From Chiloscyllium plagiosum (taxonomy: Eukaryota), in assembly GCF_004010195.1 (NCBI RefSeq), contig NC_057726.1:69115418-69179417 (forward strand): a DNA stretch of 64,000 nucleotides, in the 5' to 3' direction. Both the position numbers and the translations under genes were made by a program. Below, piece by piece: positions 5,678 through 61,911 of this stretch. The notes below the pieces were generated by a model. It did not search any database and had not been told where the DNA came from. It saw nothing but the letters and a program-made list of their open reading frames with translations. The first letter of the stretch is position 1; each line of letters starts with the position of its first letter.

Positions 5678-5988
5678 CAGCTGCTGGGGGTATTTCGGCC
5701 AAAGTGAATCCGGACCTTAAACAAATAACGGCACAGAGAGTTCAACAGCTGCCATGCTATGTCCTTTCTCCGACTAAGTCGATCATTCAAATGTTATCGC
5801 TTACTGGTGGAGAGAAGGTGATAAGACCTTTCTGCAGGAGGATAGCAGAAAGTTCTTCCGTATAGTTAAAGGAGCAGCCTATCTTAAACTTCTGAATGTG
5901 ACTGTCCAGGATGCTGGAACATATACCTGTGCAGTCAAGTCCGACCAGCGAACTCCGAAAGAAACTGCTGTGCAACTTACTGTGTATG
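5678..5988 (+). pseudogene. Gene A V-set exon, frameshifted
   Basis: NAGNAG acceptor; ...QQLPCYVLSPT, then a 1-nt loss at ~5776, then VDHSNVIAYWWREGDKTFLQEDSRKFFRIVKGAAYLKLLNVTVQDAGTYTCAVKSDQRTPKETAVQLTVY and G|gtaagt. Confidence 0.92.
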
Positions 5989-6164
5989 GTAAGTGTCCGA
6001 TAAACACAGAGACGTCGCTCCTGAGAAAAACAAGTAATGTTTACTGGATTGAGACATATCGTGTGAAATATTTACATTTATTTAAAATGAAATATGTTCA
6101 AGATTATTGAAACCGTAGAAAACCAGTGACATTACTAAGTTTCTGATTCTCTGTATTTAAAAAA

Positions 6165-6950
6165 ATCCCTTCTGGGACATGGGCATTGCTGGCTAGTCCA
6201 GCATTTATTGCCTGTCCCTAGTTGCTCTTGACAAAGTGGTGGGGAGCTGCATAAAATCACTGCAGTCGATATGCTGGAAATAACCCAAAATGCCATTTTG
6301 GAAAAAAATTACAAGATTTTGACCCAGTGACAGTGAAGGAACAGTGATGTGTTTCCATGTCAGGATGTTGAGTGGCTTGGGAGAGACTTGTAGCTGGTGG
6401 TGTTCTCATATACTTGCTGCCCTTGCCCTTCTAGATGTTAGTGATTGTGGGTTGTGTAGGTATTTTCTCAGGATCCTTGTTGAATTTCTGCAGTACACCT
6501 TGATGGTACACACTGCTGCTACTGAGTGTCTGTGGTGGAGTGATTGAATGTGGTGTCAATAAAGTGGGCAGCTTTTTAACCAGATGGTGTTAAACTTCTT
6601 GAGTGCTTCTGGACCTGCAGGCATACAGATAAGTGGGAAGCATTCCAACACACCCCCGACTTGTAGCTTGTAAATGCTGGACAGGCTTTGGGGAGTCAGC
6701 AGTTGAGTTACTTGCTGTAGTATTCCAAGTCTCCAACCCGTGGTTCAATTTATATGGCTCACCCAGTTCCGTTTCTACTCAGTGGTAACCCCCAAAATGT
6801 TGCTGATTCACTGATAGTGATTCCACTAAATGTCAAGACGTGATAGTTAGATTGTCTGTTCTTGGAGATGGTGTTTGCCTGGCATTTGTGTTGCATGAAT
6901 GTTACTTTCAACTTTTAAGCCCAAACCCAGTTCTTGCTGCATTTGGTCAT
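6165..6950 (-). mobile_element. Old CR1/L2-superfamily LINE 3' fragment
   Basis: Same family as 54600-57610: shared 3' end gctggcc/gtccagcatttattgcc and a degenerate RT C-terminus. Confidence 0.7.
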
Positions 6951-7397
6951 GGGTTGGTTCTGTTTTTTTTTTGCAATTAGCTTTTGCAGAGAAATTCATT
7001 GGGGTACTTTAATGTATTTTGGTTTGCATTTGAACACAGAGGGACAAGATGAATATCTGCAAAATTATGCATTTTTGACGTCCCTTAGCTCACGAGAACA
7101 GCCAAATCGTCAGTCCCATCACTTGGATGGTTTTAGCTAAATTCCCGGTATCGAGGTCAAATTCATCATTGTGTTTGTAAAGAAAGGTGCATTTTGATCC
7201 TATCATAATTTTATTTTAAGTCAGGACAAAGTCTGAAAACTCATTTTTCTATAAGTGCAGAAGGTATATTGAAAGGATTTTAGGATTTTTTAATGTGATA
7301 CATGTGACATTTTCATGCACTGTTCGTAACAGTAATTAATGCAACTGGTGTGCTGGAAGTATGTTGTTTTGGTCACTTAAAAATACATTTTTGCAGA

Positions 7398-7673
7398 AGA
7401 TTAGATTACATTACATTACAGTGTGGAAACAGGCCCTTCAGCCCAACAAGTCCACACCGACCCGCTGAAGCGCAACCCACCTATACCCCTACATTTACCC
7501 CTTACCTCACACTACGGGCAATTTAGGATGGCCAATTCACCTGACTTGCACCCAGAGGAAACCCACGCAGACACGGGGAGAACGTGCCAACTCCACACTC
7601 CTGAGGCGGGAATTGAACCCGGGTCTCTGGCGCTGTGAGGCAGCAGTGCTAACCACTGTGCCACCGTGCCACC
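7398..7673 (-). mobile_element. HE1/V-SINE-type tRNA SINE
   Basis: Reverse complement of ggcacggtggcacagtggttagcactgctgcctcacagc...ggttcaattccc (A/B boxes), with a (taatc)n tail. Confidence 0.92.
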
Positions 7674-7719
7674 AACGGTGAAAAGTCGGTTTGTCTAATT
7701 TGTGTTATTTTCCATTCAG

Positions 7720-8014
7720 CTTCACCAGCTCCTTTGAAAATTGTCTCTGTGCCATCTGAAGACCGTTTTTCTGCTTCTCTCAGACTCCAGTGCAGGACAT
7801 CTGACTTTTACCCAAAAACCTTTAACCTTACTTGGTATAAACATCTTGGCAGGATTTATGAATGAACAGCAGGCAAAAACTGAGGATCTTTATGAAGTCA
7901 TCAGTTCCTTAGAATTACAAGAGGCCGTTCAAAGTGGTACAGTTTACATGTGTCAAGTATATCATGTTTCAAGCTCATTTCCTGCAAATGCCAGCTACAC
8001 CATTACGAATAAAG
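7720..8014 (+). pseudogene. Gene A C1-set exon, frameshifted
   Basis: ttcag|; ASPAPLKIVSVP..LRLQCRTSDFYPKTFNLTWY, a shift at ~7839, then NILAG..LYEVISSLELQEAVQSGTVYMCQVYHVS..SYTITNK and G|gtaaca. C1 hallmarks CxxxxFYP, W and CxVxH are present. Confidence 0.92.
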
Positions 8015-8869
8015 GTAACATTTTATAATATGTGGTACATTAAATGCTCATATATGTTTCAGAATGGAAAAATAAGTAGGAATTGGTTATGGAAGTTATT
8101 TTATGTGATTATGTGAAAGTCAAAATTTGACTCCATTTAATGGATTAAAGTTTTCTTCCTTTGTGTTGTTTGAAACCGATATGTAGTTCTCACATGTAAC
8201 ATTACCAGAACTATTTAACATAGGTCACATACTTCTTTTTTTATATAGACTCAATACTCACAAACGACTGAAAGGTCAATGTTAATTCTTGAGAAAGAAT
8301 GCAAAGTATCGAATTTATGTTTTCCATGTACCTTCAATCATCCGGTAGTTTTGTTTATTTTCCCAATCATCAGAGTGCCACATATGTGATTACATACTCA
8401 ACATTAATACATAGCTGATTGGATCGTAGCTGCAGAGATTATAATTATTTTAACTGAACTTTACCTCCACGAGCAACTCAAGCAAATCTGAAAACAGGTT
8501 CCATTATATTTTTTCTGACTTTGATTTGCATGCAATGCAATCAAACTCCCACCAAATAGTATATCATTTTGCGACATAGGTTAGAGAACTGAGCACTTAT
8601 TGTAATTAGCTCTATTTCCATTAATTTTAAATTTGTCATTACTTGAGACACTTTTATCATATACCTGTTGCTTTAAATTCCAGATATTTGTTTCCAGCTG
8701 CATATCAGTTAAATAAAGAGACAACAAAATTGAAATGCACAGCATTTATGTGATATATTTATAATTTTTGCACGGCAACATAATTGAGAATGATCCTTAT
8801 GACATTTAAACCTGCGTATCTTCACTTTATAGTGCTATTTCTAATTTTGAATTTATATTAATGTTACAG

Positions 8870-8982
8870 ATTTTGCCTGAAAAATCAGTGTTCCAATGGT
8901 GGTTGGCTGTGCTTTCGTGCACTTGCAATTCTAATATTGACTGTGATGACGAGCCAGGGTTTTCTGTTCTTTAAATCCAAAG
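8870..8982 (+). pseudogene. Gene A transmembrane exon, degenerate
   Basis: tacag|; DFA*KISVPMVVGCAF, a shift, then ALAILILTVMTSQGFLFFKSK. The donor reads G|gcatga. Confidence 0.7.
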
Positions 8983-9378
8983 GCATGAGCAGAAATGAAA
9001 TCTCATTCAAATCAATATGACTGGGAGCTGAATCTCTGAACTGTACAATTTAAACAACTATTTTATGTGAAACCTTTTTCAAACATATACCCTGATTCAC
9101 ATCAAATATAAAATAAGAACATTTGCAGTTTCAGTTTGCTAAGTTGTATTGATGTAGATCAGAATTGTGATCGTGAAATACATTGCTGAAAGAAATTTCC
9201 ATTGCTTCAACCCTCAAGACATAAATTCAAAGCATCTATGCGGAATGTCTCAAGCTACATTGTGAAACTGTTGTACCCTTTTTACAATTGCCAAAAAGTA
9301 GTCGAATTGCTTTTGGCTTCTAATGAGTCCAATTCTCACTCTTTTTTGTTGTTGACTCATGTTAATTTTATTTCTCAG

Positions 9379-28056: not shown

Positions 28057-30876
28057 CTTGAGAGTAAAGTGTCACCATTTAATTGATTTCCTTAAAGATG
28101 TGAGAGGGGTGCAGTTACTAATGTGGCAGGTGACAAGGCTTGAAAGCTTCGCAGGGGAAAAAAAGGCATTTTCTGCCACAGATTTTCATCTTGCACTCAT
28201 CAGAACTATTTGCAAGAATGCCACTTCAAGGGGAAAACCAACATTTATACCGGATGAGAGGAGTGCTGATTAGTCGTCAATTGTTCACGGACTGGTGTAG
28301 ATGTTGTCATGGAATTGCTATGCCAACCACAAATATTGAATGACAGTTAACAGTTAGGCTTCAAAAACTGCGAATCCAGGCAGATTGGTACGAACTGAAA
28401 TCGAAAAATCGCACAACACCAGGTTATAGTCCAACAGGTTTATTTGAAATCTCTGAGAAATCGGCCAACAAAATCTTCCAATACTTTGTTCATTTGTGCA
28501 TTGTATGTGCACATATTCTTTCTGCCTGCAATGAACAATGCGCTATGTATCAATGGATATGTAAAGCTTTGAGTCCACAGAAGTGCACCAGCGAGTCTTT
28601 GCCTGCTGAGTCACCTGTTTAATGTTTTGTATCGTATGAAAACGTGAACTTGATATATAAACTTGAATGAGTTAAATCAAACTTGGAAAGTCATAATCAA
28701 AATGTCAAAATTTGTAGTACAATTTATAGCCCATGAATCAATACCCATGTAATGCTGTTGGAAATAAAGTTGAATGAAGTGTTGGAATAATTATGAATTC
28801 AGCTGTAATGATTTGATTGTATGTCATTCAGTAAATAAGATCAAGGATCTTCATAATCCATTCATATTGCTTTACATGCGTTTGATTTACATTTCTGTTG
28901 TTCATATATATATATATATATCAACATGGCATTACAGTGTAATTACTGAGAAAATTCTGAAGGAAATGAATATCAAGTTTCTTACAGTACACAAATATAT
29001 CATAACATTAAAGTATATTGCTGTCCGAATAAAGAAGGGGATATTCAGCCCTGCTGTCTTCTTAAAACTATTCATAAAACGCACGCTATTATCAACATTC
29101 ATTGTGCACTCAATCCGATAGGTGTATAAAGGTGTATAAATGCACCTTAAGGTGTATAAATGCCAGGTCTATGCGGATTGGTGTATGCACCTTAACTGTC
29201 AGATTTCTCTGGTTTGATCTGAAAAACAAAACTTTTTATTATGAGGATCTGTTTTAAACGACTATTCAAAAATCTGTTTAAGTGGTTTATATTCAAAGTG
29301 GTCAGAGTATCACAGACGTTAATGTTTTCGTTGATAAAGCTACCAAAACAATGAAATATTTTCACAGTCAAGAATGATGAAGAATGTTGGTGCTCTGAAA
29401 GTACAACCAATTACTCCAACTGACTTATCCCTTCTCCAAGTCACTGCAATTTTGCCCTGGAATTGACAGTCTCTTTAGAAGATTACCATTATAACTGCTT
29501 TCTCGAAATTTGTGAATAATGTATTGCAGATCAAGAGATGGAAAAACCAAGAATTTAATCATTTCATCCTGCTGCTTATTTGAAATCTTTGCGATCCGAT
29601 CGAAGGTTACCCGTGTACTAAAGTATATTTTGTCCTATCTACATCATCAAAGGCATCATAGCATAATTTCCTTTTACCCTTACTTTTATATAAAGGGTAT
29701 CAATTTCTGTGTTTTCTACTGTTGGCTGGGAGAAACAAAATCTTCTTAAGATCATATAAGTGAATTTCCAATACACATTTTTCACTGCAGATTGAATTTC
29801 CATTAGAAACAATAGCAATGCAGAACGCAACTTTGGGCGAAATCTGGGATCCCATCTTTCGCAGGAAGTGTCATTTCTCCTGCACCTTACGGATGGAGCG
29901 CGGGCCTAATTGAACAAATGGGGCAAAGCTCACGTTCGGAACACAAGAGGAGAACGACAAACACCAGAAAGAGTTTTTTTTTAATTGCCTGCACATGTCC
30001 GTTCTAGTTTATGTCCGTTCTAGTGTATTCAACACATTAAGGCTGTTGCCTGAAATAACTATCGGAAGTAGGATGAATAATAATTGGTTGTTTATCTAAT
30101 GGCGCCAATATTCCTTGATTTTTTTTTAAACAAGCAGTACAATATCGGATGTCTTTACAATTTAGTGATGATTGGTGATTTCAGAAGCTGTTTTCTTTTT
30201 CTTAATATCTGTTTCTCCCGATCTATTAACGTATTATTAACAACCTCTTAATGTTCTGGACGTGATATGGGTTGAATTCAGTCTTCGAAATCAAACTGTT
30301 TAGTTCATAATCTTTCTTCCTATTATGGATTTTGTTGAAGTTTAAAGAATTCTTGCGGTGTTTACACAGCTTTGATGTACTCTGGAGCACTGTGCACGTT
30401 TGGCTGTCTTCTTTACAGTAACGACCGGAGCAATATTTCAGGGAAATTGGTAACCTGCAGTGCAAGCGTACCTGTAAGTTTTGTGTGAAGTTGTGTTCTT
30501 CGCTCATTATTCTTCCACCTAAAATGCTTGAATAAACCATTTTCTGAAGTGAACTGTACCTTCTCCATCTTCCATCATCTCTGTATTCTATTTGATAAAC
30601 ATTGGGTCTAAAAGCATTGACCTTAATGGGCCTTGCTACAGACATTCCTCCAGTCAAAAAAAAGTCTATTTGTGAGTTCTTTCTTAAAATGACTATTTCA
30701 AATGCTACCAAATCATCTAGTAATTAATTTATTGGATTCCAAGGTTTAATGCACTTTAATATATTCAAACATGAAATGTCAGTTTGCATTGCATTAACTT
30801 TTATTACATGTTATTTTTCTTTAGTTGGATTTTAAAAATATCAGCCGCACCTGAGTTTAACTTGCATTAACTTCCT

Positions 30877-30951
30877 TCACAGGCTTCTCCCCGAGCCTGT
30901 GATATCCAAATCTGTGTAAACCTTGTTATTCTCTGTCATTCATTGTTTCGT
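30877..30951 (-). CDS. Gene B terminal exon, premature TGA before YxxL
   Basis: tttacag|TKQ*MTENNKVYTDLDITGSGRSL*; aligns with gene A TKQSMTDSKLYIALKFNDS. Confidence 0.8.
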
Positions 30952-31167
30952 CTGTAAACAGCAATATTTGGGTTGAAGTCTGACACTCTGAAATGCAGCT
31001 TCTGCTTTGTTGGGTAACAATAAGTGAAGTGAACAAATGGCTGTGAAATATCACGTTTCCTGCTCATTCATTGTTCCGCAGTTGATTTGCCAACATTTTG
31101 TCTGTTTTTGCGCGAAAAATAAGCCAATGCATTTTGCAGTATCTGTGTCAATTATTGGCAATGTAAA

Positions 31168-31890
31168 ATAGAACATAGAACAGTACAACACAGTACAGGC
31201 TCTTCGGCCCTTGATGTTGTGTTGACCTTTTATCCTTCTCAAGGATCAACTAACTACGTACTCTTCATTTACTGTAATCGATGTGCCTATCCAAGAGTCG
31301 CTAAAATGTCCTCTATTTATCTGACTACTACCACTGTGTAAATAACCGACCTTTGACATCTCCCCTAAACCTTCCTCCATTCATCTTAAAATTATACCCC
31401 CTTGTTCCGCCCTTCGAGAAAAATCTCTGACTATTCACTCTATCTATGCCTCTCATCATCTTGTACACCTCTATCAAGTCACCTCTCACCCTTCTTCGCT
31501 CCCATGAGAAAAGCCTTAGCTCCTTCAAACTTTCTTCATAAGACATGCTCTCCATTCCAGGCAGCAGCCTTGTAAATCTCCTCTGCACTATCTATAAAGC
31601 TTCCACAGCCTTCCTATCATGAGTCGACCAGAAGTGGACGCAGTATTCCAACAGTGTTCTAACCAGAGTTCTATAGAGCTGTAACATAACCTCGCGGGTC
31701 TTAAACTCAATGCCCCTGCTAATGAAAGCCAACACACCATATGTTTTCTTAACAACCCTATCAACTTGGGTGGCAACTTTGACGGATCTATGAACATGGA
31801 GCCAAAGGTCCCTCTGTTCCTCTACACTGTCAAGAATCGTGTCTTTAACCCTGTATTCTACATTCAAATCGACCTTCCAAAATGAATCCC
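31168..31890 (-). mobile_element. CR1 3' fragment in the last intron of gene B
   Basis: EEQRDL, LEYCVHFWS and RRRVRGDLIEVYK motifs. Confidence 0.93.
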
Positions 31891-32703
31891 ATGTCGCTTT
31901 TGTTCTGTAAATAGCGCAGGTTTAACTATTAGTTTCTTACTTGCAATTGTAGACGGTATTACAAGATTTGACTCCATTCATTCTTAAGATGCAGTATTAA
32001 CGTCCTGAATGTTCAACTCTTTCCAGATTACCTTAATCTTCAAGTTTTCGCATTAGGATCCGGTTCTGTCACATCATTTCTAATTCGGCCAACTGACTTT
32101 TTCATCATCAATAACTGACTGTTATTGAAGATTTACTTTTTTAGTTTCAATTTAATCATTTAATTCTGTATTACTTGAGGAATAGAATGGTTTTCTGTAT
32201 TTTTTGCCTCGTCCATGACTATAGATTCTCTTTATCCTTTCACCGTTGAGATGAAGGTTTTCTTTCTCAATGCTTGCCGGCCGTCTCCTAATTCTACTCC
32301 CTCATTCATCAATATATTTTGCTTAAGTTCCCATCACTGAAACATGTCATTCTGTCCAACAGATCATACCTTTGATTACATTCTATATCAAAAACCTTGG
32401 TAATTTTTCGCCTTACTGTCTCGTTAAGTCCCTTAGTCCTTTAACCTCAAGTAATTATTGTGGTCCTCTCAAACTATTAACTATATTCAAAATAATGTTG
32501 CTGATGTTTTTAACTTTTGACCCAACCGGTCCTTTGCAACCTGTCGTCTGCACTAAATGACATTATTATACCGTCAAATGTTATCTAATTTTAACATACC
32601 TTTTTAGACTTGCAAACATGCAGGGAATTGACACAATGGTAAAGAGATCGCTTTTTGGAAATGCCAGCCCAAACAGCTTAAATAGTTGCTGCCAGTGGCC
32701 TAC

Positions 32704-32747
32704 CTGCTCATTGCGCTGATTGCACTCTTTCAGTTTTCTGCGTGTTC
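32704..32747 (-). CDS. Gene B cytoplasmic exon 1
   Basis: ctcatttag|GTRRKLKECNQRNEQ|gtaggc; 44 nt, phase 1-0. Confidence 0.8.
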
Positions 32748-33344
32748 CTAAATGAGAAGTAAATCAGACAAAATGTACTTTAATTCTGTTGCAACTACGC
32801 ATGAAAATGTTACAAATAATATCACAGGCACTTGCTCCAAAAGCATCGGCGTCAAGAACAAATCCCATGATATAGATTGGTTAAAATCTGGACACAACTC
32901 GCAGGTTAAACTGTGAAACAATTTGTTGTATTTAATGTAAACCATGACATTAACATCAGTTAATGTTGCTGCAATCCCAAACTGAGAAGTCACAGAGAGG
33001 AGGGTGGAAATAGGCGGCATATAGAATTCTCGGTTCAGGCAGCAATTTAAACTTCCTTCTTCCTGTGCAGTGCCGAGTTGTGTTCCATCACCCAGAGAAC
33101 AGAGGAACATAGACCATGTGCAGACACATGAGATTCGTTTTTCATGGCATAATGATCGGCACCGACTTGATGAGCCGAAGGGCCTGCTGCTATACTGTGC
33201 AATTCTATGTTCTATGCTTCCATTTGAGTGATCCTACCAGTTGACGATATCATGAACTGATTCAGTGCCTTTAAATTGAAAATACCACGTGGAACAGCGT
33301 ACTTAATGAACATTATCTCCTGTTTTAACATTTAACATTCTTAC

Positions 33345-33446
33345 CGATTCGCATGAGTTTGCATGTCACTATGAGGAGGGAAATCAATCCAACTCCCAAA
33401 CAACGGAAAAACGTTAGAGAAGAGATGTTATTGTTCCCGACATGAT
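33345..33446 (-). CDS. Gene B transmembrane exon
   Basis: ttcacag|DHVGNNNISSLTFFRCLGVGLISLLIVTCKLMRI G|gtaaga; 102 nt, phase 1-1. Confidence 0.85.
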
Positions 33447-34794
33447 CTGTGAAGATAACAGTAATTTCAACACGTTCACAGCATGACCGAATAGTAATAA
33501 ATCCCACATCATTCCAGCGGTTACTCGTCTTTTTAGATTAGGAAGAATAATTTTGATCACGTTTAAGCTTTGTGCTATCGAGATACTGACATATTTCGTC
33601 TGACAATTCTGGTTTGGCATCTAAAGTCACTGCAAGAAAACAAATTGTATCCAGGGGGTTTTGGCCTGATCATTTACACATCAATTCGCAGTCTCACTTT
33701 TGCTTGCGCCATCCAATCCGTTCAAGGAAAACATTGACTTGAGCAAAGAGCTGTGGATCTGAAATATGAAAATAATGGGGAGGCAAAAATCATCTGCTCG
33801 AAATCGTCAGCAAAGCTGAAGCAACTGCCAAGAAAGAAATGTCTAACGTCATTTAGACATGTAGATCCACGACATTCCGCCATGTGAAAATAAAGTTCCT
33901 TAATTTCAGTCTATTTGATCTATATTATGTTTAAATACTTGCATGAAATATGGGGTGGTTCCAAACTGGACGAGCATAAAGCGCTGGGAATAGTCAGCAT
34001 CCGGAAAATTGTACTCCATTACAATTTGTAGATTCAGCTACTCCATTCAGGGGAAAAAAAATCAAGCCTGGGTATCAACTCTGAGCCAATAGGAATTAAC
34101 AGAAGCAGCATATTCATGGTTAAAAATAATGCATCCAACAGATGACATTACAACAACGTACCAAGGATGGGGTTAATTAATCCCCAACGAACAAATCAGA
34201 CAACATTATGCAGTCATGGTACAACGAAGGATTAATAATGGTGGGGAAGAAAATAACCACTTGACGCAGAGTCATCAACAACAGCACCATTCTCAAAACC
34301 CCACGCACTGATGTTAGGCACAGTGTCTCCGAATTGCACTGTGCTCCAGAGTCATGATAAGCTTTATCCAAAACTGGATGTTAGAGCTGAATCGCAAATG
34401 CGAAGGCAACGAGTCTGACCTTAGAATAGGGGGTTTATTTCATCGAGAAGGACTTCAGGAGATCGCACAAAATCCAACGGTAATACTTGAACGGGCGAAC
34501 GTAGCTACCCCGCCCCCCCCCCCACTGGTATTTGTAGGACAAAGGAGTGAGGTTATTTTTGTCGGAGGCGAATCTGTTTAACTGCAGAATATAACAGTTG
34601 TACGTCCTCAACCCAGTGTTTTTGAAATAAGCATCTTAAACTGTTGCATCAATGACTTAATTCCCATTATTATGTCAGTTCGCTGGCAATTTCTAAAATG
34701 CACTACTACCTTTAGATATTGAATCCTTTAATGTCTAAATGCAGAAGTATTTGGAAAGCATTCAGGTTTGAGTAAGATGTGGCATGTATCATTC

Positions 34795-35105
34795 ATCTTT
34801 GAAGAAGTGACGAAGTTGATTTATGGGGGAAGGGCAGTAGATGTCATAAACAATGACTTCAGTAAAGGGTTTGATAAGGTTCCCCTCAGTCGGCTGATGG
34901 AGAAAGCCTACTGTTCCAGGGCGTGCTAGCTACTGGGTAGGGAACTGTCTGGAGAGCAGCTGACAGTAGCAGAGGAAAGAAGTTTCTCAAAATGGAGGAG
35001 AGTGACCAGTAATATTCCACAGGGATTCGTGTTGGGACTGCTGTTGTTTGTGATGTACATAAATGATCGGCAGGTAGGTATAGGTAATCTGATTAGCAAG
35101 TTTCC
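34795..35105 (+). mobile_element. CR1 RT fragment
   Basis: DFSKGFDKVP and PQGFVLG motifs. Confidence 0.75.
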
Positions 35106-35781
35106 CTTAGTTTAAATATCTCGACTCTCAGGGGAATAACCACCATTAATATTCTGTATTATTATTGACCACGAATTGAGTTAGAACTATTGACTGCCCT
35201 ATAAACGCTGTGACAGACGAAACCAGGTACACCTTGGAAATGGGAATACCACAGCTAGAAACTCAATTCCGGACTCCCCCAAATCCTGTCCTTCAACTGC
35301 AATGAACAGTCAACAAGTGTGACAGAACCCTTTCCGTTTGTCAACTTGTGAATCAGCAACAAATAAGCATCTGTAATTCATCCAGGACGATTGAACAGCA
35401 TCCCATCGATCACCTTATACAGTAACACCCATTACATTCAGCAAAGAGCTTAACAGAATTAAGCTATTCAGTTCGTGAAATCTACCTTGACATTTCACAA
35501 TACCATGGCTGATCTGCTTTTGGTCTGAATTTAATATTCTAATCTACCCTAGCTAGCGCTGACTGCATTGTCTATCAGAAAACAATCAAATTGCGCCTGA
35601 GATGTATTAAATGAGACAGCATCACATTCTGGGAAATTAAGTCCACACACTAAGCCCTCCACAGATCCGTCTTAAATGTAAAACCTCAAGTTCTCAAACG
35701 GTGTTCCACACGTTTGTCTTTACTAAAAGTGAAAACATCCTTCCGAATTCGGCCAAATCTAATCAGGACGTTGCTGTTTAT

Positions 35782-36890
35782 ATAGAACATAGAACATAGA
35801 AGAATACAGCGCAGTACAGGCCCTTCGGCCCTCGATGTTGCGCCGATCCAAGCCCACCTAACCTACACTAGCCCACTATCCTCCATATGCCTATCCAATG
35901 CCCGCTTAAATGCCCATAATGAGGGAGAGTCCACCACTGCTACTGGCAGAGCATTCCATGAACTCACGACTCACTGAGTAAAGAACCTACCNNNNNNNNN
36001 NNNNNNNNNNNNNNNNNNNNNNNNNNNNNNNNNNNNNNNNNNNNNNNNNNNNNNNNNNNNNNNNNNNNNNNNNNNNNNNNNNNNNNNNNNNNNNNNNNNN
36101 NNNNNNNNNNNNNNNNNNNNNNNNNNNNNNNNNNNNNNNNNNNNNNNNNNNNNNNNNNNNNNNNNNNNNNNNNNNNNNNNNNNNNNNNNNNNNNNNNNNN
36201 NNNNNNNNNNNNNNNNNNNNNNNNNNNNNNNNNNNNNNNNNNNNNNNNNNNNNNNNNNNNNNNNNNNNNNNNNNNNNNNNNNNNNNNNNNNNNNNNNNNN
36301 NNNNNNNNNNNNNNNNNNNNNNNNNNNNNNNNNNNNNNNNNNNNNNNNNNNNNNNNNNNNNNNNNNNNNNNNNNNNNNNNNNNNNNNNNNNNNNNNNNNN
36401 NNNNNNNNNNNNNNNNNNNNNNNNNNNNNNNNNNNNNNNNNNNNNNNNNNNNNNNNNNNNNNNNNNNNNNNNNNNNNNNNNNNNNNNNNNNNNNNNNNNN
36501 NNNNNNNNNNNNNNNNNNNNNNNNNNNNNNNNNNNNNNNNNNNNNNNNNNNNNNNNNNNNNNNNNNNNNNNNNNNNNNNNNNNNNNNNNNNNNNNNNNNN
36601 NNNNNNNNNNNNNNNNNNNNNNNNNNNNNNNNNNNNNNNNNNNNNNNNNNNNNNNNNNNNNNNNNNNNNNNNNNNNNNNNNNNNNNNNNNNNNCTTTCCC
36701 CTCGTCCACCTCCTTCGTCACCTTCTCAAAGAATTCAATAAGGTTTGTGAGGCACGACCTGCCCTTCACAAAACCATGCTGACTCTCCTTGATCACATTA
36801 TTCCTATCCAGATGTTCATAAATCCTATCCCTTACAATTCTCTCTAAGACTTTGCCCACAACAGAAGTGAGAAGTGAGACTCACCGGCCT
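35782..36890 (-). mobile_element. Young CR1 LINE spanning an assembly gap
   Basis: (ttctatg)n tail and [30 protein letters not shown]; near-identical to the copy at 45074-47667. Confidence 0.93.
35992..36693. other. Assembly gap (N run)
   Basis: Run of n. Confidence 1.
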
Positions 36891-38766
36891 TTCAATCTAA
36901 TTAATTCTTATCCTTCTAAACTCAAATGGGTAAATCACCTTATCTCGTGTGGTAACCGTTTTAATCAGGAATTAGTTGACTGGACATTATCTGAGCTGAT
37001 TTTAAAGCAATTGTACACTTTTTCCACTGTGGAGACTAAAATTCAAAATACAGTCTGACAAGTCAAGAAAAATCCCTGACGCTGCAACCACTCCTACCCC
37101 CTGCACCCATGCACATCACCACACAAAGCACCACTTTTTTTATGCTCTGTTCCCCGTTCAATTAAAGCCGAAATACTTTTGGCCTTCCTAAAGACTTCCT
37201 TTGCCATGGAAACACATTAGACTGTAGTGAGCACAATCTACATAAGGCACTGCGACAACTCGTGTTATCTGGTTCAAGAACATCTTTCAAATTCACATTC
37301 CTTACACCTAGCATAGACATTGGGAAGAGATAGGAAACATTTACGTTGGGAAGGCCATTACGTTCCAGTGTGTGCCGCCAATTCAAACATAATTGAGACT
37401 GGGATCTAATCACTGTTCATTTTAGAGTCAGTATAACGGACCTTTTATTTGCTGCACAGCACCTCGGGTATGGGGTAAACAGGCAGCAAAGGCAAAATCT
37501 GAGCCAACGGTCTCATTGGCAAGGGAAATGAAGTCAGGATACATTCAGGTCATGGAAGAAAAATAGCCTTTCCTGGAAAGAAAAGAAATTGAAAAGGAAA
37601 ATTTTAAACCGGAAATGACTTTTCTGAATGGAGAGTCGTCCCTGATATTTCTACAGTAGGCTAAATAGTTCCATGACAGGGAAAAGCGAGTGTCACATCT
37701 GAAACATGAATTAGTCCTCCCTTTGCATGGAACTGATAGCTGTACAAATAGGCTTCATATCAAACGCTGTCAAGTCTGAGTATTCATATCGACTTGTCTG
37801 ATTTGGATTCAGGCATTTTCTAGTGCAGGCTGTTATTAAAACTCGACATTTCGTCTTTGCTCAAAATGAGCTGCTGCAATTGCCATATCCAGTGTTAAGC
37901 TTTCGAATAATATAATAATATTATATTATTAGGAAGTCGAGAAAAAGCCACACTGAAAGGTTATTACCAAAGTTATCCCCCTCCCCAACACTCCCCCCCC
38001 CCCCCCCCCCTTAACTTTGCAGCTAGAATTCGAACTTGATTACTATAACCGAGCCCTGGGCACTCTGAGGCTAACCTCTGATGATGCAATTGCCGAAGAG
38101 TGGAAAAGCTTTTTTTACATATAGAAAGCTGAGACTTTGAAACGAATACACCAGGTCGATATCTGTATCTGAGAGGATGAGAAACTTTGCTAATATATTT
38201 TTTAGAAGATGAATTCTTTTCAATTTCCCATGAAACTTACAACTTTCATAGATTTTCAATACAGACGAACAGTGGTTGGGGATTGACTCATAACTAACAT
38301 CAACTGCAAGTACTTGTCTCCACAATGGCCCTTAATAACCTTTCCTAATGAGACGCACCAAACTTAAATTTCAAAATGATGGACTCGTACCAAGTTAATC
38401 TGTGATCTAATCGATCGGGCAAATAATAACCAATGGGTGTAAAAATGACTCATGCGTGGTATTCCTGGGTGTCAGCTAATGTTTGAATGACATTGAATCA
38501 TACAAGTCTGCAGCACAGTGAAAAAGCTGTTAAGTCACTCATCATGCCCGCCCTTGTCAAAAATTGCCACCTCATCACTCTCATCCCATTTCCCAGCAGC
38601 TGGCATCGCAAAAGGAAATCTAAATACTTCTAAGATGTTTTGAGGATATCTGTCTGTACCGCCCTTCCAGGCAACCAGTTCTAGATTCCCACCACCCTTT
38701 GGGTGAAACAAACATTTTCCTCACATCTCCTCTCTACTTTTAATCGATGTCTCCCTGCTCAATAAT

Positions 38767-39977
38767 CCCTGTATCAAGGGGAAAAAATGTCTTCCTGTCT
38801 ACCCTATCTTCGCTCCTCATAATTTTATACATCTCAATCATGTCACATCTCCATTTCTTCTGCTCGAAGGAAAACATACGAAGTCTGTCCAATCTCCATT
38901 CATAAGCGAAACTGTCCAGTCCAGGCAACATCCTGGTAGATCTCTTCTGCAATCTCCCCAGCCCGATAACATCGCTGGTGTAATATCGATTCAGAACTGT
39001 CCACAATACTCGAGCAGTGGCTTCAACAACGGTTCAGACAGTTCCACTACAGCCTCCCCTCTCTTAAACTCATGTCTCCACTAAGAACAGCAAGTATCCT
39101 AAATATTTTCTTAACCACGTTTTCCAACTGCACTAATACATTCAGGAACCGGCTGAAAATGTGCAACAAGCTCCCTCTGATTCCAAGTTCCTACCGCTCA
39201 ACATGTCCTGTATCCCCTTGCCCGTTAGTCCATCCCAAATACGTCACCTCACATTATCCAGGCCATTGGACCCACACCCCTCTATCCTCTTTCAATTTTC
39301 TCTTATTCTTCAACTATAAAAATAGCGCCGGATTATGGCAACAAATGGCAGCTTTTCGTTGCATTTTATTGCCCTGTATCAAGGGGAAAAAATGTCTTCC
39401 TGTCTACCCTATCTTCGCTCCTCATAATTTTATACATCTCAATCATGTCACATCTCCATTTCTTCTGCTCGAAGGAAAACATACGAAGTCTGTCCAATCT
39501 CCATTCATAAGCAAAACTCTCCTGTCCTGGCAACAGCCTGGTAGATCTCTTCTGCAACCTCCCCAGCCCGATAACATCGCTGGTGTAATATCGATTTCAG
39601 AACTGTCCACAATACTCGAGCAGTGGCTTCAACAACGGTTCAGACAGTTCCACTACAGCCTCCCCTCTCTTAAACTCATGTCTCCACTAAGAACAGCAAG
39701 TATCCTAAATATTTTCTTAACCACGTTTTCCAATTGCACTGATACATTCAGGAACCGGCTGAAAATGCACAACAAGGTCCCTCTAATTCCAAGTTCATAC
39801 CGCTCAACATGTCCTGTATCCCCTTGCCCGTTAGTCCATCCCAAAGACGTCACGTCACATTTTCCAGGCCATTGAACCAACACCCCTCTATCCTCTTTCA
39901 ATTTTCTCTTATTCTTCAACTATAAAAATAGCGCCGGGTTATGGCAACAAATGGCAGCTTTTCGTTGCATTGTATTG
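38767..39977. repeat. ~605-bp tandem duplication of an old minus-strand CR1 fragment
   Basis: 38767-39371 and 39372-39977 are highly similar with scattered substitutions. Confidence 0.95.
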
Positions 39978-40263
39978 TATTCCATTCATTCTTGCAATCT
40001 GCGGTTATCCTCTTCATTAACTCACCCACCAAATTCTGTGTCATCTGAGAAGTTACTGATTCAAGTCTAAATCTTTTCTATAATCCACAAACAGCAAGGT
40101 ACCCCACACTCACCTCTCTGGGATAACCCTATAAAAATTGACGTTTAGTCGGATAAACACCCCTCACCCATCACAGTCTCTTGTTGCAAAGCGGGATTGG
40201 TGGTATGCTCATTTTCTAAGCAAATTAGAATACAACAAAATTAATATAATTGAATGAACCTAC

Positions 40264-40566
40264 CCTATTTATTGAAAGTGTAGCTGACATTGACTGGCGT
40301 CTGCAGTGAGATGTGAGACACTTCACAAGTGTAAACGGTACCGCTCTGAACGGGTTCTGTCTCAGTCAGTTTGCTGGAAACCTCATAGAGGCCGATTGCA
40401 TTCTGCAATTTGACATGTTCCATCCCGGTTGCAATTTCTGAATCATTTTTGTACCACGTGATATTCAGGTTGTCTGGGGAAAATGCAGCAGTTGTGCAAA
40501 GAAGAGTTAGAGGGAAAGCTGAGCCGTTCTCCGGCAGTTTGACCAGTTGGAGTGGAGTCGGAGGGA
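40264..40566 (-). pseudogene. Gene B C1-set exon with dead acceptor and terminal stop
   Basis: VPPTPLQLVKLPENGSAFPLTLLCTTAAFSPDNLNITWYKNDSEIATG..GLYEVSSKLTETEPVQSGTVYTCEVSHISLQTPVNVSYTFNK*. The acceptor reads tttcg|, and TAG at 40267-40265 precedes G|gtaggt. Confidence 0.92.
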
Positions 40567-41264
40567 CGAAACAAAAAGAAAAGGAAACGTTTGTTTTGAA
40601 GCCTGCATTTAATTTGAAAAAGGTGAAGCAAATTCTACCACAAGGTCAAGCAGAACCAGACAACCATAAAAATCATGCAATTAAATCGGTGTTTAATAGG
40701 GGATACCTCACAGTTTAAAACAATCTGCTGGTTCATTTCGAAGAAAAAGCGGAAATGTTCATCAGCGCCGAATTACAAACATTTAAAGGGGAAACGTTCT
40801 AACGAATATCGCAGTTTTCACATCATAGAGTGTAATTGTTGTTTTAAATTTTGCATTGGCAAATGCCTTCGTGTCAATCCCTGAAATTAATGAATTGCTT
40901 ATTTCGTTGTCTTAATATTTTCACATTTTCCTCAAGTACTCAGATATACAAAGCATTATATTTCGAATGTTTGTTCCAATTTTAAGATGTGCAGTCATTC
41001 AGTGCAATTTTCTTTCCGGGAATAGGATCATTGTGTTCCAATATTTAAGGAGATCACATTTGACACCACAACAAAAATTCTTCACTCAAATCACAGGAAG
41101 TGGATATTATAAACTGAGTTAAACTTGCACTCAACAAATAAACTCGGTGGAAGTACATGTGAAGTTTCAGTAAATACGTTCTCGTGTTCATTTGGAACCT
41201 CGCATTTCTTGAACGAGGTATCTGTTGGAGGCCACCTCTAATAACAAGGGCCAGACTGGGTTTG

Positions 41265-41670
41265 TGCGCGTGAAATATAGAGGATTGAGAGGCGACTTTA
41301 TGGAATTTTAGCCGATTCTTGGAGGATTTACATTATAAATGCAGAAAAATTGTGTACCCTTGTGGGAGAGACTGGGACCAGAGAGCAACACCTCAGAATA
41401 AGAGGTCGCTTATTTAAGACAGAAATAAGGTGGAAACTGTTCTGTCACAGGGTCGAGAGTATGCAGAATTATTTTCCGCAGCATGTGGTTGAGATTTGGT
41501 TTGTAAGTACATTCCATGCTGGGCTAGACAGATTTTTGATTGCTGACTAGTTCAAGGCCCATCGAGAAAAGGCGGGAAAGTAGAGCTGGGGATGATCCGA
41601 TCACCGATGATGGCATTGACTGGCGGAGCAGACCCAAACGGTCTACCCCCGCACCTCCGTCTTATGGTGT
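41265..41670 (+). mobile_element. Old CR1 3' fragment in the V-C1 intron of gene B
   Basis: RRLRGD and ETGTREQHLRIRGRLFKTE motifs. Confidence 0.75.
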
Positions 41671-41800
41671 TAAAATCGGAACAAAAAATTGCAAATTCTT
41701 TCTTTGTAGATTAGATCCACACTTTAAAAATTATTCCGATTAATGCCTTAAATCCAATTGCACAACCAACGCAGTATTTTCCCTTCTCCTTGATCCTTAC

Positions 41801-42112
41801 CGAACACGACCAGGTTGGTGCCGGTTCCGTTTGCAGCCACATTGTGTGTCACTCTGCAGTAATAAACCCCAGCGTCCTCCAATCTTATATCCGCCAGTTG
41901 TAAGACAGCTCCTCCCCAATTGAGGGAAAAAAGCTGGATCTTGTGGTCCAAAATTTCCTCCAAGAACCCATCTCTCCCATCTCTGCACCACTGCACTTTC
42001 ACTGGCTTCTTGTCTTGAAAGATGGGGAAAATGCAATAAAGTTTAACCAAGGCGCCTCTGGTGACAGCGCACTCTCGATCTTGTCTCACCATCAACTGAG
42101 AATTGTGAGAGG
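41801..42112 (-). CDS. Gene B germline-joined VJ-type Ig exon (open frame)
   Basis: ASHNSQLMVRQ..VKLYCIFP..VQWCRDG..GAVLQLADIRLEDAGVYYCRVTHNVAANGTGTNLVVF and G|gtaagg. The acceptor is a T-rich tract followed by gtgcaaaag|. Confidence 0.93.
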
Positions 42113-42318
42113 CTTTTGCACAAAAAAAACACAGTTTTCAAGACCTAACAATCGAATTAGACAATCCAACTAACAATCCGAGAAGATGTTAGGATGCAAC
42201 GCATATATCAAAAAAAATCAGCAACAAGAAAGGCTAAATAAAGCTTTATTATGTATTAATCATTAACAAATTGAAAGAACGGTCATCGTTTGGAAAGAAG
42301 AACATGGAATACATTTAC

Positions 42319-42370
42319 CTGTGTAACTGATCAATAACATGGTCGTGCAGTGAAGTAAGGCTCTGAGCAT
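42319..42370 (-). CDS. Gene B leader exon
   Basis: MLRALLHCTTMLLISYT followed by G|gtaaat. Confidence 0.88.
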
Positions 42371-45073: not shown

Positions 45074-47667
45074 TTGGGTAACGAACCAGGCCAGGTGTTA
45101 GAATTAGAGGTAGGTGAGCACTTTGGGGATAGTGACCATAATTCGGTGTTTTTAATTCTCGTGATGGAGAGGGATAAGTGTGTACTACAGGGCAAGAGTT
45201 ATAGCTGGGGTCAGGGAAATTATGATGCGGTGAGGCATGACTTAGGATGTGTGGCTTGGAAAAGTAGACTCCAAGGCAAAAGTGTAAATGATATGTGGAG
45301 CTTGTTCAAGGAGCAACTATTGAGTGTCCTTGATAATTATGTACCTGACAGGCAGGGAGGAAAGGGTCGTGCGAGGGAGCCGTGCTTTAATAAGGAATTG
45401 GAATCCCTTGTTAAATGGAAGAGGGCGACCTATCTCAAGATGAGACGTGAAGGTTCAATTGGGGCGATTGAGAGTTATAGGGTAGCCAGGAAGGACCTGA
45501 AGAGAGAGCTAAGAGCAGCAAGGAGGGGACATGAAAGGTCCTTAGTCGGTAGGATTAGGGAAAACCCAAAGGCTTTCTATAGGTATGTTAGGAATAAAAG
45601 AATGACTAGGGTAGGAATAGGTCCAGTCAAGGATAGTAGTGGGAAGTTGCGTGTGGAGGCGGAAGAGATGGGGGAGACACTGAATGAATACTTTTCTTCA
45701 GTATTCACTCAGGAACAGGGCATTGTCGATGAGAATACTGAGGCACAAATAAGTAGAATGGATGGCTTTGAGGTATATAGAGAAGAGGTGTTGGAAATCC
45801 TGGAAAACGTGAAAATAGATAAGTCCCCTGGGCCTGATGGCATTTATCCTAGGATTCTCTGGGAAGCAAGGGAGGAGATTGCAGAGCCATTGGCCTTAAT
45901 TTTTATGTCCTCTTTGTCTACAGGAGTAGTCCCAGAAGACTGGAGGATAGCAAATGTGGTTCCCTTGTTCAAAAAGGGGAGTAGGGATAGCCCTAGTAAC
46001 TATAGGCCGGTGAGTCTCACTTCTGTTGTGGGCAAAGTCTTAGAGAGAATTGTAAGGGATAGGATTTATGCACATCTGGATAGGAATAATGTGATCAAGG
46101 ATAGTCAGCATGGTTTTGTGAAGGGCAAGTCGTGCCTCACAAACCTTATTGAATTCTTTGAAAAGGTGACGAAGGAGGTTGATGAGGGAAAAGCGGTAGA
46201 TGTGGTGTATATGGATTTTAGTAAGGCATTTGATAAGGTTCCCCATGGTAGGCTACTACAGAAAATACGGAGATATGGCATTGAGGGTGAGTTGGAGGTT
46301 AGGATTAGGAATTGGCTGGATGGAAGAAGACAGAGGGTAGTAGTTGATGGCAAAGTTTCTTCATGGAGTGCCGTCACTAGCGGTGTTCCGCAAGGATCTG
46401 TTTTGGGACCATTGCTGTTTGTCATTTTTATAAATGACATGGAAGAGGGGTTAGAAGGTTGGGTAAGCAAGTTTGCGGATGANNNNNNNNNNNNNNNNNN
46501 NNNNNNNNNNNNNNNNNNNNNNNNNNNNNNNNNNNNNNNNNNNNNNNNNNNNNNNNNNNNNNNNNNNNNNNNNNNNNNNNNNNNNNNNNNNNNNNNNNNN
46601 NNNNNNNNNNNNNNNNNNNNNNNNNNNNNNNNNNNNNNNNNNNNNNNNNNNNNNNNNNNNNNNNNNNNNNNNNNNNNNNNNNNNNNNNNNNNNNNNNNNN
46701 NNNNNNNNNNNNNNNNNNNNNNNNNNNNNNNNNNNNNNNNNNNNNNNNNNNNNNNNNNNNNNNNNNNNNNNNNNNNNNNNNNNNNNNNNNNNNNNNNNNN
46801 NNNNNNNNNNNNNNNNNNNNNNNNNNNNNNNNNNNNNNNNNNNNNNNNNNNNNNNNNNNNNNNNNNNNNNNNNNNNNNNNNNNNNNNNNNNNNNNNNNNN
46901 NNNNNNNNNNNNNNNNNNNNNNNNNNNNNNNNNNNNNNNNNNNNNNNNNNNNNNNNNNNNNNNNNNNNNNNNNNNNNNNNNNNNNNNNNNNNNNNNNNNN
47001 NNNNNNNNNNNNNNNNNNNNNNNNNNNNNNNNNNNNNNNNNNNNNNNNNNNNNNNNNNNNNNNNNNNNNNNNNNNNNNNNNNNNNNNNNNNNNNNNNNNN
47101 NNNNNNNNNNNNNNNNNNNNNNNNNNNNNNNNNNNNNNNNNNNNNNNNNNNNNNNNNNNNNNNNNNNNNNNNNNNNNNNNNNNNNNNNNNNNNNNNNNNN
47201 NNNNNNNNNNNNNNNNNNNNNNNNNNNNNNNNNNNNNNNNNNNNNNNNNNNNNNNNNNNNNNNNNNNNNNNNNNNNNNNNNNNNNNNNNNNNNNNNNNNN
47301 NNNNNNNNNNNNNNNNNNNNNNNNNNNNNNNNNNNNNNNNNNNNNNNNNNNNNNNNNNNNNNNNNNNNNNNNNNNNNNNNNNNNNNCGTATGGAGTCAGC
47401 TATTACGAGGGGGCATAGCTTTAAATTAAGGGGGGTAGATATAGGACTGAAGTTAGGGGTAGGTTCTTCACTCAGCGAGTCGTAAGTTCATGGAATGCCC
47501 TGCCAGTAGCAGTGGTGGACTCTCCCTCTTTATGGGCATTTAAGCGGGCATTGGATAGGTATATGGAGGATAGTGAGTTAGTATAGGTTAGGTGGGCTTG
47601 GATCGGCGCAACATCGAGGGCCAAAGGGCCTGTACTGCGCTGTATTCTTCTATGTTCTATGTTCTAT
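45074..47667 (+). mobile_element. Young 5'-truncated CR1 LINE, ORF2 open up to the gap
   Basis: ~470 uninterrupted codons ([40 protein letters not shown]) and a (ttctatg)n tail. Confidence 0.97.
46483..47386. other. Assembly gap (N run)
   Basis: Run of n. Confidence 1.
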
Positions 47668-61590: not shown

Positions 61591-61911
61591 ATGCCAACGA
61601 AACCCCTTTCTCTGTGACTCAAGTCCCCGCATGCCTGACTGAAGTGGAAGGTATAAATGTGTCCATGTATTGTTCCATTCCGCTATTCTCTCACAACCCA
61701 GCAGTAGACGTTTACTGGCAGAAAGGCGACCAGGGCAAAACTTTGGATCTGACTGCGGACCAAAGGAAAATAATGTTACCATTCAAGCAAGGATCCACTG
61801 AGCTCCAACTGGTCAATCTACATTTCCAGGACTCTGGAATCTATTATTGCAGCATTAGGGTCTCTGGCAGGAAGGTTTTCAATGGAAATGGGACAAGGCT
61901 GATCGTACATG
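61591..61911 (+). CDS. Gene C germline-joined VJ-type Ig exon, intact; gene continues beyond the window
   Basis: ttctgacag|DANETPFSVTQ..VSMYCSIP..VDVYWQKG..ELQLVNLHFQDSGIYYCSIRVSGRKVFNGNGTRLIVH G|gtgagt. Confidence 0.95.

What the first reader, a model, noticed from the sequence alone, without database searches (positions are those of the whole stretch)
30877..42370. Gene B lesions could convert a V-C1 tyrosine-motif receptor into an NKp30-like V-TM(Arg) activating receptor
Seen: leader, V, TM and tail exon 1 are all open. The clear damage is a dead C1 acceptor (tttcg), a TAG at the end of C1, and a TGA three codons into the last exon that removes KVYTDL. C1 is symmetric phase 1-1, so skipping it gives an in-frame product L-V-DHVGNNNISSLTFFRCLGVGLISLLIVTCKLMRI-GTRRKLKECNQRNEQTKQ*. 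The TM has Arg where gene A has Gly (FFRCL vs VVGCA). Known: NKp30 and paired activating receptors have a TM Arg and a short tail and pair with CD3zeta/FcRgamma. Inference: this may be an inhibitory-to-activating switch in progress. Neutral decay remains equally possible.
Basis: partly seen in the sequence, partly recalled or inferred. Interest (0 to 1): 0.85.

Follow-up and report, generated by a model that had tools for sequence, protein, structure and literature searches.

The report
Decayed shark VJ-C1 paired-receptor gene
This is a damaged member of a large shark family of antibody-like surface receptors that shows the usual marks of an inhibitory receptor turned activating, but it is most likely now a dead gene and not a new NKp30-like receptor.

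Summary
An independent read set also shows the TAG. The N gap lies inside a LINE copy in the C1-to-TM intron, so no reading frame crosses it.

Gene B belongs to a cartilaginous-fish VJ-C1-TM receptor family. Its nearest full-length relatives have long ITIM tails and Gly where gene B has Arg. In the family, an inner TM Arg goes with a short tail: 7 of 8 with Arg against 3 of 30 without. The last exon also carries a frameshift and a Tyr-to-stop change, and the ITIM exon is gone. An old inhibitory-to-activating change is therefore supported.

The V-only "NKp30-like" step is not supported:
- C1 coding sequence is clean (0 of 22 conserved columns broken), while V breaks 3 of 20.
- An in-frame AG lies 36 nt upstream of C1.
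- No RNA evidence and no annotated product were found.

Most likely this is a recently dead activating-type gene. The scan noted four similar clusters on the same chromosome.

The parts
42319..42370 (-). Leader exon (17 codons plus 1 base, GT donor).
   Evidence: It resembles the leaders of P0161 and P0005.
41801..42112 (-). V exon with a J-like GTGTNLVV end. It is open and phase 1-1, with an AG acceptor and a GTAAGG donor.
   Evidence: Pfam V-set E 1.7e-9. 81% identical to P0004. Breaks 3 of 20 conserved family columns: P12R, W42C, R57K.
40264..40566 (-). C1 exon (303 nt, phase 1-1). The coding sequence is intact except for its last codon. It may be a pseudoexon.
   Evidence: Pfam C1-set E 1.2e-12. 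92% identical to P0004. 0 of 22 conserved columns broken. Of the 10 differences to paralogous contigs that were shown, 6 are synonymous.
40567..40568 (-). CG where the acceptor AG of C1 should be.
   Evidence: P0004 has V joined to C1 at exactly this point, VVF|VPPTPL. Not checked in reads.
40265..40267 (-). TAG, the last codon of C1. Relatives P0004 and P0005 have Leu here.
   Evidence: Also present in a contig of run X4.
40603..40604 (-). Alternative AG 36 nt upstream of C1. It is in frame and adds 12 codons without a stop.
   Evidence: Whether it is used was not tested.
35782..36890 (-). LINE copy in the C1-to-TM intron that holds the N gap 35992-36693.
   Evidence: Its flanks match those of the gap at 46483-47386. 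RVT_1 E 3.4e-5 at 36695-36865.
33345..33446 (-). Stalk and TM exon. It is open and phase 1-1, with Arg at 33405-33403.
   Evidence: Best matches P0159 and P0005 have Gly at that residue.
32704..32747 (-). Tail exon 1 (open, phase 1-0).
   Evidence: 11 of 18 residues identical to P0161, in an alignment that runs 3 residues past the exon's end.
30845..30951 (-). Last exon with three lesions: TGA at 30942-30940 (Gly or Glu in relatives), a frameshift between 30907 and 30883, and TAA at 30859-30857 (Tyr in relatives).
31200..31900 (-). LINE 3' fragment in the intron where relatives have their ITIM exon. No trace of that exon was found.

Best explanation
Gene B is a member of a large cartilaginous-fish family of non-rearranging VJ-C1-TM receptors. 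The family has inhibitory members (long tails with ITIM-like motifs) and activating-type members (Arg inside the TM, short tail).

Gene B comes from the long-tailed lineage and changed in two stages.

Stage 1, older:
- TM Gly changed to Arg.
- The ITIM exon was lost.
- A stop arose at the fourth codon of the last exon, after which the rest of the tail decayed.
This made a V-C1-TM(Arg) short-tailed receptor of the kind that pairs with an acidic signalling adaptor. The pairing is inferred, not shown.

Stage 2, recent:
- The C1 exon lost its AG acceptor.
- The C1 exon gained a terminal TAG.
- V picked up changes at conserved residues.

The gene is therefore most likely now dead, a casualty of birth-and-death turnover in the cluster. 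A V-TM product made by skipping C1 is possible by frame arithmetic but has no evidence behind it.
For: - Family and nearest relatives.
- TM: gene B has Arg where P0005, P0159 and P0161 have Gly.
- Family-wide link: an inner Arg goes with a short tail. 7 of 8 members with Arg against 3 of 30 without, out of 38 TM-bearing members among 56 examined; Fisher p 7e-5.
- Tail: TGA replaces Gly or Glu, and there is also a frameshift and a Tyr-to-stop change. The ITIM exon is not detectable, with scores at the level of shuffled queries.
- Lesions crowd into the last exon: 3 of 5 lesions in 12% of the coding length, p 0.013, a test chosen after seeing the data.
- C1 looks recently constrained: 0 of 22 conserved columns broken, 2 gene-B-specific changes against 4 in P0004, and 6 of the 10 shown differences to paralogous contigs are synonymous.
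- V looks relaxed: 3 of 20 conserved columns broken against 0 in P0004, P0161 and P0005.
- The TAG is confirmed in run X4.
- No product of this locus was found among proteins of 57-644 aa.
- Neighbouring gene A is also frameshifted.
Against: - Expression was not testable. The single-cell RNA run laid 0 reads, which the tool calls no test. The RNA status of run X1 is only a guess.
- All other splice sites are intact and V, TM and tail exon 1 are open, so a working V-TM transcript cannot be excluded.
- The counts are small, and the family members are not independent. Some are isoforms or orthologues of one another.
- Gene conversion among the multi-copy C1 exons could keep C1 clean without selection. 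In X4, depth over the exons is 80-180 against about 12 beside them.
- V domains of immune receptors evolve fast anyway.
- One family member, P0068, has both an Arg and a long tail.
- The order of events rests on lesion counts, not on dated branches.
Confidence: 0.55

Rival explanations
1. Gene B is a working V-only activating receptor. The C1 exon is a pseudoexon that is skipped. V joins the stalk/TM exon in frame, and the TM Arg recruits an adaptor.
For: - C1 is phase 1-1, and V, TM and tail exon 1 are open.
- The V donor is strong and the TM acceptor is good.
- Both C1 lesions hit the same exon.
- The final stop lies in the last exon, so such a transcript would escape nonsense-mediated decay (inference).
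- The TM Arg and short tail match the activating members of the family.
- Recalled precedent, from no call: human KIR2D genes skip a pseudoexon that encodes an Ig domain.
Against: - No junction or transcript was seen.
- None of the 56 family proteins examined has V joined directly to TM.
- V has lost a conserved Trp and Pro while C1 is unblemished, the opposite of what this reading expects.
- All Ig-type exons here are phase 1-1, so staying in frame is no evidence.
- The in-frame upstream AG could keep C1 in the message and lead to the TAG.
Confidence: 0.24
2. Plain neutral decay of an inhibitory gene. The Arg is one more random substitution, and none of the changes was ever selected.
For: - There are five disabling lesions and a missing exon.
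- V is damaged at conserved sites.
- The cluster holds other broken genes.
Against: - The Arg lies in the outer part of the TM, at or beside the place where other family members carry theirs by manual alignment.
- Across the family an inner TM Arg marks short-tailed members.
- Lesions crowd into the last exon.
- C1 shows no sign of long neutrality.
Confidence: 0.12
3. Some lesions are assembly or sequencing errors or are polymorphic. The real gene would then be an intact V-C1-TM(Arg) activating receptor.
For: - The CG acceptor and the TGA were not verified in reads.
- The region is multi-copy, which invites mis-assembly.
- The C1 coding sequence is otherwise perfect.
Against: - The TAG is present in an X4 contig that is 99% identical to the window and includes intron sequence.
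- One search's table of letters left out or put in lists no indel at the acceptor, but it reports only some contigs and 90 substitution rows were not shown.
Confidence: 0.05
4. C1 is kept in the message through the upstream AG at 40604-40603. The TAG then yields a secreted V-C1 protein, a soluble decoy.
For: - The AG is in frame and adds 12 codons without a stop.
- The C1 donor is intact.
- Several family proteins in the databases lack a TM: 18 of 56, though many of them are partial.
Against: - The tract before that AG is A-rich and looks weak.
- A TAG far upstream of the last junction should trigger nonsense-mediated decay (general knowledge).
- No transcript was seen.
Confidence: 0.04

Closest known systems
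Cartilaginous-fish VJ-C1-TM receptor genes. NCBI names them variously: 'tyrosine-protein phosphatase non-receptor type substrate 1-like', 'NCR3 ligand 1-like', 'tapasin-related protein-like', 'Ig lambda-1 light chain-like'. Examples are P0004, P0005 and P0161.
   Same: Same exon plan and domains. V is 81% and C1 92% identical to P0004. Leader, TM, tail exon 1 and last exon can be aligned to P0161 and P0005.
   Different: Gene B has Arg for Gly in the TM, no ITIM exon, three lesions in the last exon, a lost C1 acceptor and a TAG.
SIRP-alpha / SIRP-beta paired receptors (V-C1-C1).
   Same: Non-rearranging V with a J-like end, followed by C1. SIRP-alpha (2wng) matches the family profile across V and C1 at E 8e-26. 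That the SIRP family has inhibitory and activating partners with a basic TM residue is recalled, from no call.
   Different: Gene B has one C1 domain, not two. Antibody chains score as well or better, so the relation is distant.
NKp30 (NCR3).
   Same: A single V with a J-like end, TM Arg and short tail would be shared, but only if C1 is skipped. NKp30's own architecture is recalled, from no call. NCBI calls one V-only isoform of this family 'NCR3-like' (P0067).
   Different: NKp30 is not among the 60 best solved-structure matches of the V exon or the family profile. Gene B still carries a C1 exon. Adaptor pairing and ligand are unknown. The shark NCR3 family paper (Kinlein 2021) is not held, so I could not compare with it.
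KIR2DL/KIR2DS: activating forms derived from inhibitory ones, and skipping of pseudoexon 3 (recalled, from no call).
   Same: The same three moves: a basic residue in the TM, an early stop that removes the ITIMs, and an Ig-domain exon left in the gene but disabled.
   Different: In KIR the skipped exon and the products are shown by cDNA. Here nothing is shown at RNA level.
UrIg and PRARP, other non-rearranging VJ-C1 genes.
   Same: Unsplit VJ exon plus C1. UrIg2 is the best solved-structure match of gene B's C1 and the second best match of the family profile. Both are mentioned as VJ-C1 genes in passages of PMC10751288 and PMC12227049.
   Different: UrIg is a secreted, multi-C-domain, antibody-like protein. 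Gene B's family is a membrane-receptor family with paired signalling types.

Membership tests
Cartilaginous-fish VJ-C1-TM receptor family | V-set domain with a germline-joined J-like G-x-G motif. | tested here: met
   Pfam V-set E 1.7e-9. GTGTNLVV at 41828-41805. Aligns to 20 family members.
Cartilaginous-fish VJ-C1-TM receptor family | C1-set domain encoded by the next exon. | tested here: met
   Pfam C1-set E 1.2e-12. 22 of 22 conserved columns kept. The exon has no AG acceptor and ends in TAG.
Cartilaginous-fish VJ-C1-TM receptor family | TM exon and tail exons homologous to those of family members. | tested here: met
   TM aligns to P0159 and P0005. Tail exons align to P0161, P0005 and P0147.
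Activating partner of a paired receptor family | Basic residue inside the TM. | tested here: met
   Arg at 33405-33403. Family members P0099, P0124, P0084 and P0068 carry an Arg at or beside that place in the manual alignment.
Activating partner of a paired receptor family | Short tail without tyrosine motifs. | tested here: met
   The stop at 30942-30940 leaves about 23 cytoplasmic residues with no Tyr, judged from the per-exon translations.
Activating partner of a paired receptor family | Intact, expressed ectodomain. | tested here: inconclusive
   C1 has lesions and V has lost 3 of 20 conserved residues. No RNA evidence either way.
Activating partner of a paired receptor family | Association with an acidic-TM adaptor (FcR-gamma, CD3-zeta or DAP12). 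| not testable with these tools
   Needs co-expression and co-precipitation.
NKp30 (NCR3) | Ectodomain made of one V domain only. | tested here: inconclusive
   True only if C1 is skipped. No junction was seen, and an in-frame upstream AG exists.
NKp30 (NCR3) | V domain closest to NKp30 among known V domains. | tested here: not met
   NKp30 is absent from the 60 best solved-structure matches of the V exon and of the family profile. Lower ranks were not shown.
Pseudogene | Several independent disabling lesions. | tested here: met
   Lost AG, TAG, TGA, a frameshift and TAA, and no detectable ITIM exon.
Pseudogene | Neutral evolution of the remaining exons. | tested here: inconclusive
   V: 3 of 20 conserved columns broken. 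C1: 0 of 22. No codon-level branch test was possible.
Pseudogene | No functional transcript. | tested here: inconclusive
   0 reads from the single-cell RNA run, which the tool calls no test. One unspliced 212-nt contig in a run whose RNA status is a guess.

The most novel reading that the evidence does not exclude
A shark VJ-C1 inhibitory receptor gene caught part-way to a V-only, Arg-TM, short-tailed activating receptor. Tail truncation and Gly-to-Arg came first. The C1 exon then became a skipped pseudoexon. If the V-TM message exists, this would be a living example of how an NKp30-type receptor can arise from an antigen-receptor-like VJ-C1 gene.
Probability: 0.2. Interest if true: 0.6.

Novelty: new member of a known kind. 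Interest (0 to 1): 0.3.

Why it matters
Activating receptors that arise from inhibitory ones are well documented in mammalian NK-receptor families. The usual route is a charged TM residue plus an early stop.

Gene B, together with the family-wide link between TM Arg and short tails found here, suggests that the same route operates in sharks, in a family built like antigen receptors (VJ-C1). That is useful context for the origin of paired receptors and of V-only receptors such as NKp30.

By itself, though, one broken gene in a birth-and-death cluster is ordinary. Its value depends on RNA evidence that could not be obtained here.

Tried and rejected
- Expression. The look-up of sequencing runs listed no holder on record as RNA. 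Read laying gave 0 reads from single-cell RNA run X9, which the tool calls no test. In X1, whose RNA status is a guess, one 212-nt contig at 41795-42006 runs 6 nt past the V donor into the intron, so it is unspliced or DNA. X1's other contigs lie on an intronic repeat.
- Sister species. Contigs of organism B (X2) lie only on the intronic repeat 41256-41561, so they give no information on the lesions.
- Annotated product of the locus. None was found among proteins of 94-299 aa, 202-644 aa or 57-180 aa.
- Relic of the ITIM exon in the intron 30952-32703. Best local scores were 25-28, against shuffled means of 27-31. Rejected.
- Gene A as comparator. Rejected as unreliable, because its V and C1 are frameshifted and the frame of its TM exon is uncertain.
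- Papers. Kinlein 2021 (by DOI and as PMC8273117) and Flajnik 2012 (PMC3709836) are not held, so I know them by title or recall only. They may already describe this family.
  - I saw passages of PMC12227049 and PMC10751288.
  - I saw reference-list lines of PMC10450919 and PMC12272517.
  - I saw only listings.
  - A search for 'PRARP' gave unrelated papers.
  - Supplements were not opened.
- Earlier notes looked up by sequence: blank, which means nothing.
- The joined V-TM model was not built, searched or folded. Exons were searched apart.

Full report
WHAT IS THERE

On the minus strand there is a six-exon gene:
- leader, 42370-42319
- V, 42112-41801 (312 nt)
- C1, 40566-40264 (303 nt)
- stalk/TM, 33446-33345 (102 nt)
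- tail exon 1, 32747-32704
- last exon, from 30951

V, C1 and TM are all phase 1-1. Pfam calls the second exon V-set (E 1.7e-9) and the third C1-set (E 1.2e-12). V ends in a J-like GTGTNLVV.

- CG instead of AG before C1 (40568-40567)
- TAG as the last C1 codon (40267-40265)
- TGA as the fourth codon of the last exon (30942-30940)

All other splice sites are canonical.

THE GAP

N 35992-36693 lies in the 6.8 kb intron between C1 and TM.
- Its two flanks match, at 95% and 93%, the two flanks of the window's other gap at 46483-47386, in the same order.
- The upstream flank is a reverse-transcriptase fragment that reads into the gap (RVT_1, E 3.4e-5).

The gap therefore interrupts a LINE copy, not an exon, and no frame has to be carried across it. 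I did not fill it. A tblastn search with full-length relatives found no further Ig exon between C1 and TM.

READS

- An X4 contig covers 40150-40354, including intron, with only two other letters, neither in the TAG. The TAG is therefore confirmed in a second data set.
- In X4, depth over the V and C1 exons is 80-180 against about 12 beside them. Many of those contigs are 5-12% different, so these exons are multi-copy in this genome.
- Single-cell RNA run X9 laid no read, which the tool itself calls no test.
- X1, whose RNA status is only a guess, has one exact 212-nt contig at 41795-42006. It runs 6 nt past the V donor, so it is unspliced or DNA.
- Organism B gave only an intronic repeat.

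The CG acceptor and the TGA were not checked. There is no evidence for or against transcription, and none for a V-TM junction.

WHAT FAMILY

A search of 1.84 billion representatives with the V exon, followed by the source names, shows a family of V-C1-TM proteins in sharks, rays and chimaera. NCBI names it inconsistently: SIRP-like, NCR3-ligand-1-like, tapasin-related-like, Ig-lambda-like.

- The closest relative is P0004, a partial Chiloscyllium punctatum protein. It is 81% identical in V and 92% in C1. It has V joined to C1 exactly where gene B has CG, and Leu where gene B has TAG.
- The closest full-length relatives are P0161 (Heterodontus) and P0005 (Heptranchias). They have long tails with LKYVTL or LTYLTL and further tyrosine motifs.
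- A profile of the family matches antibody chains, UrIg2 and SIRP-alpha (E 8e-26 over V plus C1). NKp30 is not in the 60 rows shown.
- The scan's notes list four more clusters of such genes on the same chromosome. I did not check those notes.

THE TM ARGININE

Gene B's TM exon aligns best to P0159 and P0005. Both have Gly exactly where gene B has Arg, and so does P0161.

I examined 56 family proteins, of which 38 have a TM.
- 8 of the 38 carry an Arg inside the TM. 7 of these 8 have tails of 34 residues or fewer and no ITIM-like motif.
- 30 of the 38 have no inner Arg. Only 3 of these 30 have short tails.
- Fisher p is 7e-5.

The members are related to each other, and some are isoforms, so the p-value overstates independence.

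In the alignment, P0099, P0124, P0084 and P0068 carry their Arg at or beside the place of gene B's. The Arg therefore sits where the family's activating-type members have theirs. Within gene B's own lineage it is derived.

'VVGCA' in gene A is read in a frame with stops on both sides. The only open TM-like frame there has its own Arg. Gene A also has frameshifts in V and C1.

THE TAIL

- The TGA stands where P0005 and P0147 have Gly and P0161 has Glu.
- Downstream, homology to relatives continues in another frame (30907-30845). This implies a frameshift.
- The Tyr of the terminal ..VNAVYAQ motif is a TAA.
- The exon that carries the ITIM in relatives cannot be found in the 1.75 kb intron between the two tail exons. 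Scores were at the level of shuffled queries. A LINE 3' fragment lies in that intron.
- Three of the five point lesions fall in the last exon, which is 12% of the coding length. P is 0.013, a post-hoc test.

Together with the clean C1, this suggests the tail was cut first and the rest stayed under constraint for a time.

CONSTRAINT IN V AND C1

I aligned each exon separately to 20 relatives.

| Measure | V | C1 |
|---|---|---|
| Conserved columns (85% or more) broken by gene B | 3 of 20 | 0 of 22 |
| Changes specific to gene B | 7 | 2 |
| Changes specific to P0004 | 5 | 4 |

- The three broken V columns are Pro to Arg, Trp to Cys and Arg to Lys.
- P0004, P0161 and P0005 each break none of the conserved V columns that they cover.
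- Of the 10 C1 differences to paralogous X4 contigs that the reads table displayed, 6 are synonymous. Ninety more rows were not shown.

This is the reverse of what a 'V kept, C1 discarded' model predicts (V against C1, p 0.03 and 0.10). There are two caveats. V domains evolve fast, and gene conversion among multi-copy C1 exons could keep C1 clean.

SPLICING

Skipping C1 would indeed stay in frame, by phase arithmetic. But every Ig exon here is phase 1-1, so staying in frame carries no weight.

An AG at 40604-40603, 36 nt upstream of C1, is in frame and adds 12 codons without a stop. If it is used, C1 stays in the message and the TAG ends it. The result would be a decay-prone message or a soluble V-C1 protein.

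None of the 56 family proteins has V joined directly to TM.

No protein from this locus is on record in the length ranges searched.

VERDICT

The inhibitory-to-activating idea is supported for the TM and tail by family comparison. The last step, to an NKp30-like V-TM receptor, has no support, and the constraint data lean against it.

My probabilities:

| Reading | Probability |
|---|---|
| Former activating-type V-C1-TM(Arg) gene, recently dead | about 0.55 |
| Working V-TM receptor | about 0.24 |
| Plain decay, with the Arg a chance change | about 0.12 |
| Assembly or sequencing errors | about 0.05 |
| Soluble V-C1 protein | about 0.04 |

I did not build, search or fold the joined model. The key paper on shark NCR3-family genes is not held, so I cannot say whether this family is already described there.

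Noticed in passing
window 5307-9030 (+): Gene A is another leader-V-C1-TM gene. It has a frameshift inside V (about 5770-5800) and another inside C1 (about 7840-7890). Its TM exon is open only in a frame that does not fit the phase-1 junction. That frame has an Arg in the TM and a short tail that ends in the same exon.
   Followed up: partly
window 61593-61907 (+): A third, open V exon of another subfamily. It is 30% identical to gene B's V, scores Pfam V-set E 2.4e-12, and by eye resembles P0089. The rest of the gene runs off the window.
   Followed up: partly
window 38767-39977: Tandem duplication of a 606-bp unit (96.5% identity) in the C1-to-TM intron. A run of about 21 G lies near 38010.
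   Followed up: no
window 35782-36890 and 46004-47667: Both N gaps of the window lie at the same inner part of two copies of one LINE family, in opposite orientation.
   Followed up: partly
window 40264-40566 and 41801-42112: In run X4 the V and C1 exons have 7-15 times the depth of the flanking intron, with contigs 5-12% different. This implies many close paralogues in this genome.
   Followed up: partly
proteins P0005-P0187: Across the family, an Arg inside the TM appears at different positions in different lineages (for example P0160 against P0099 and P0084). This suggests repeated, independent origin of activating-type members.
   Followed up: partly
window 41987-41985 (-): The conserved second Trp of the WW(K/R) motif is a Cys in gene B's V. 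By recalled Ig-fold knowledge it lies on the face that V domains use for pairing. Whether it is damage or a new disulphide site is unknown.
   Followed up: no
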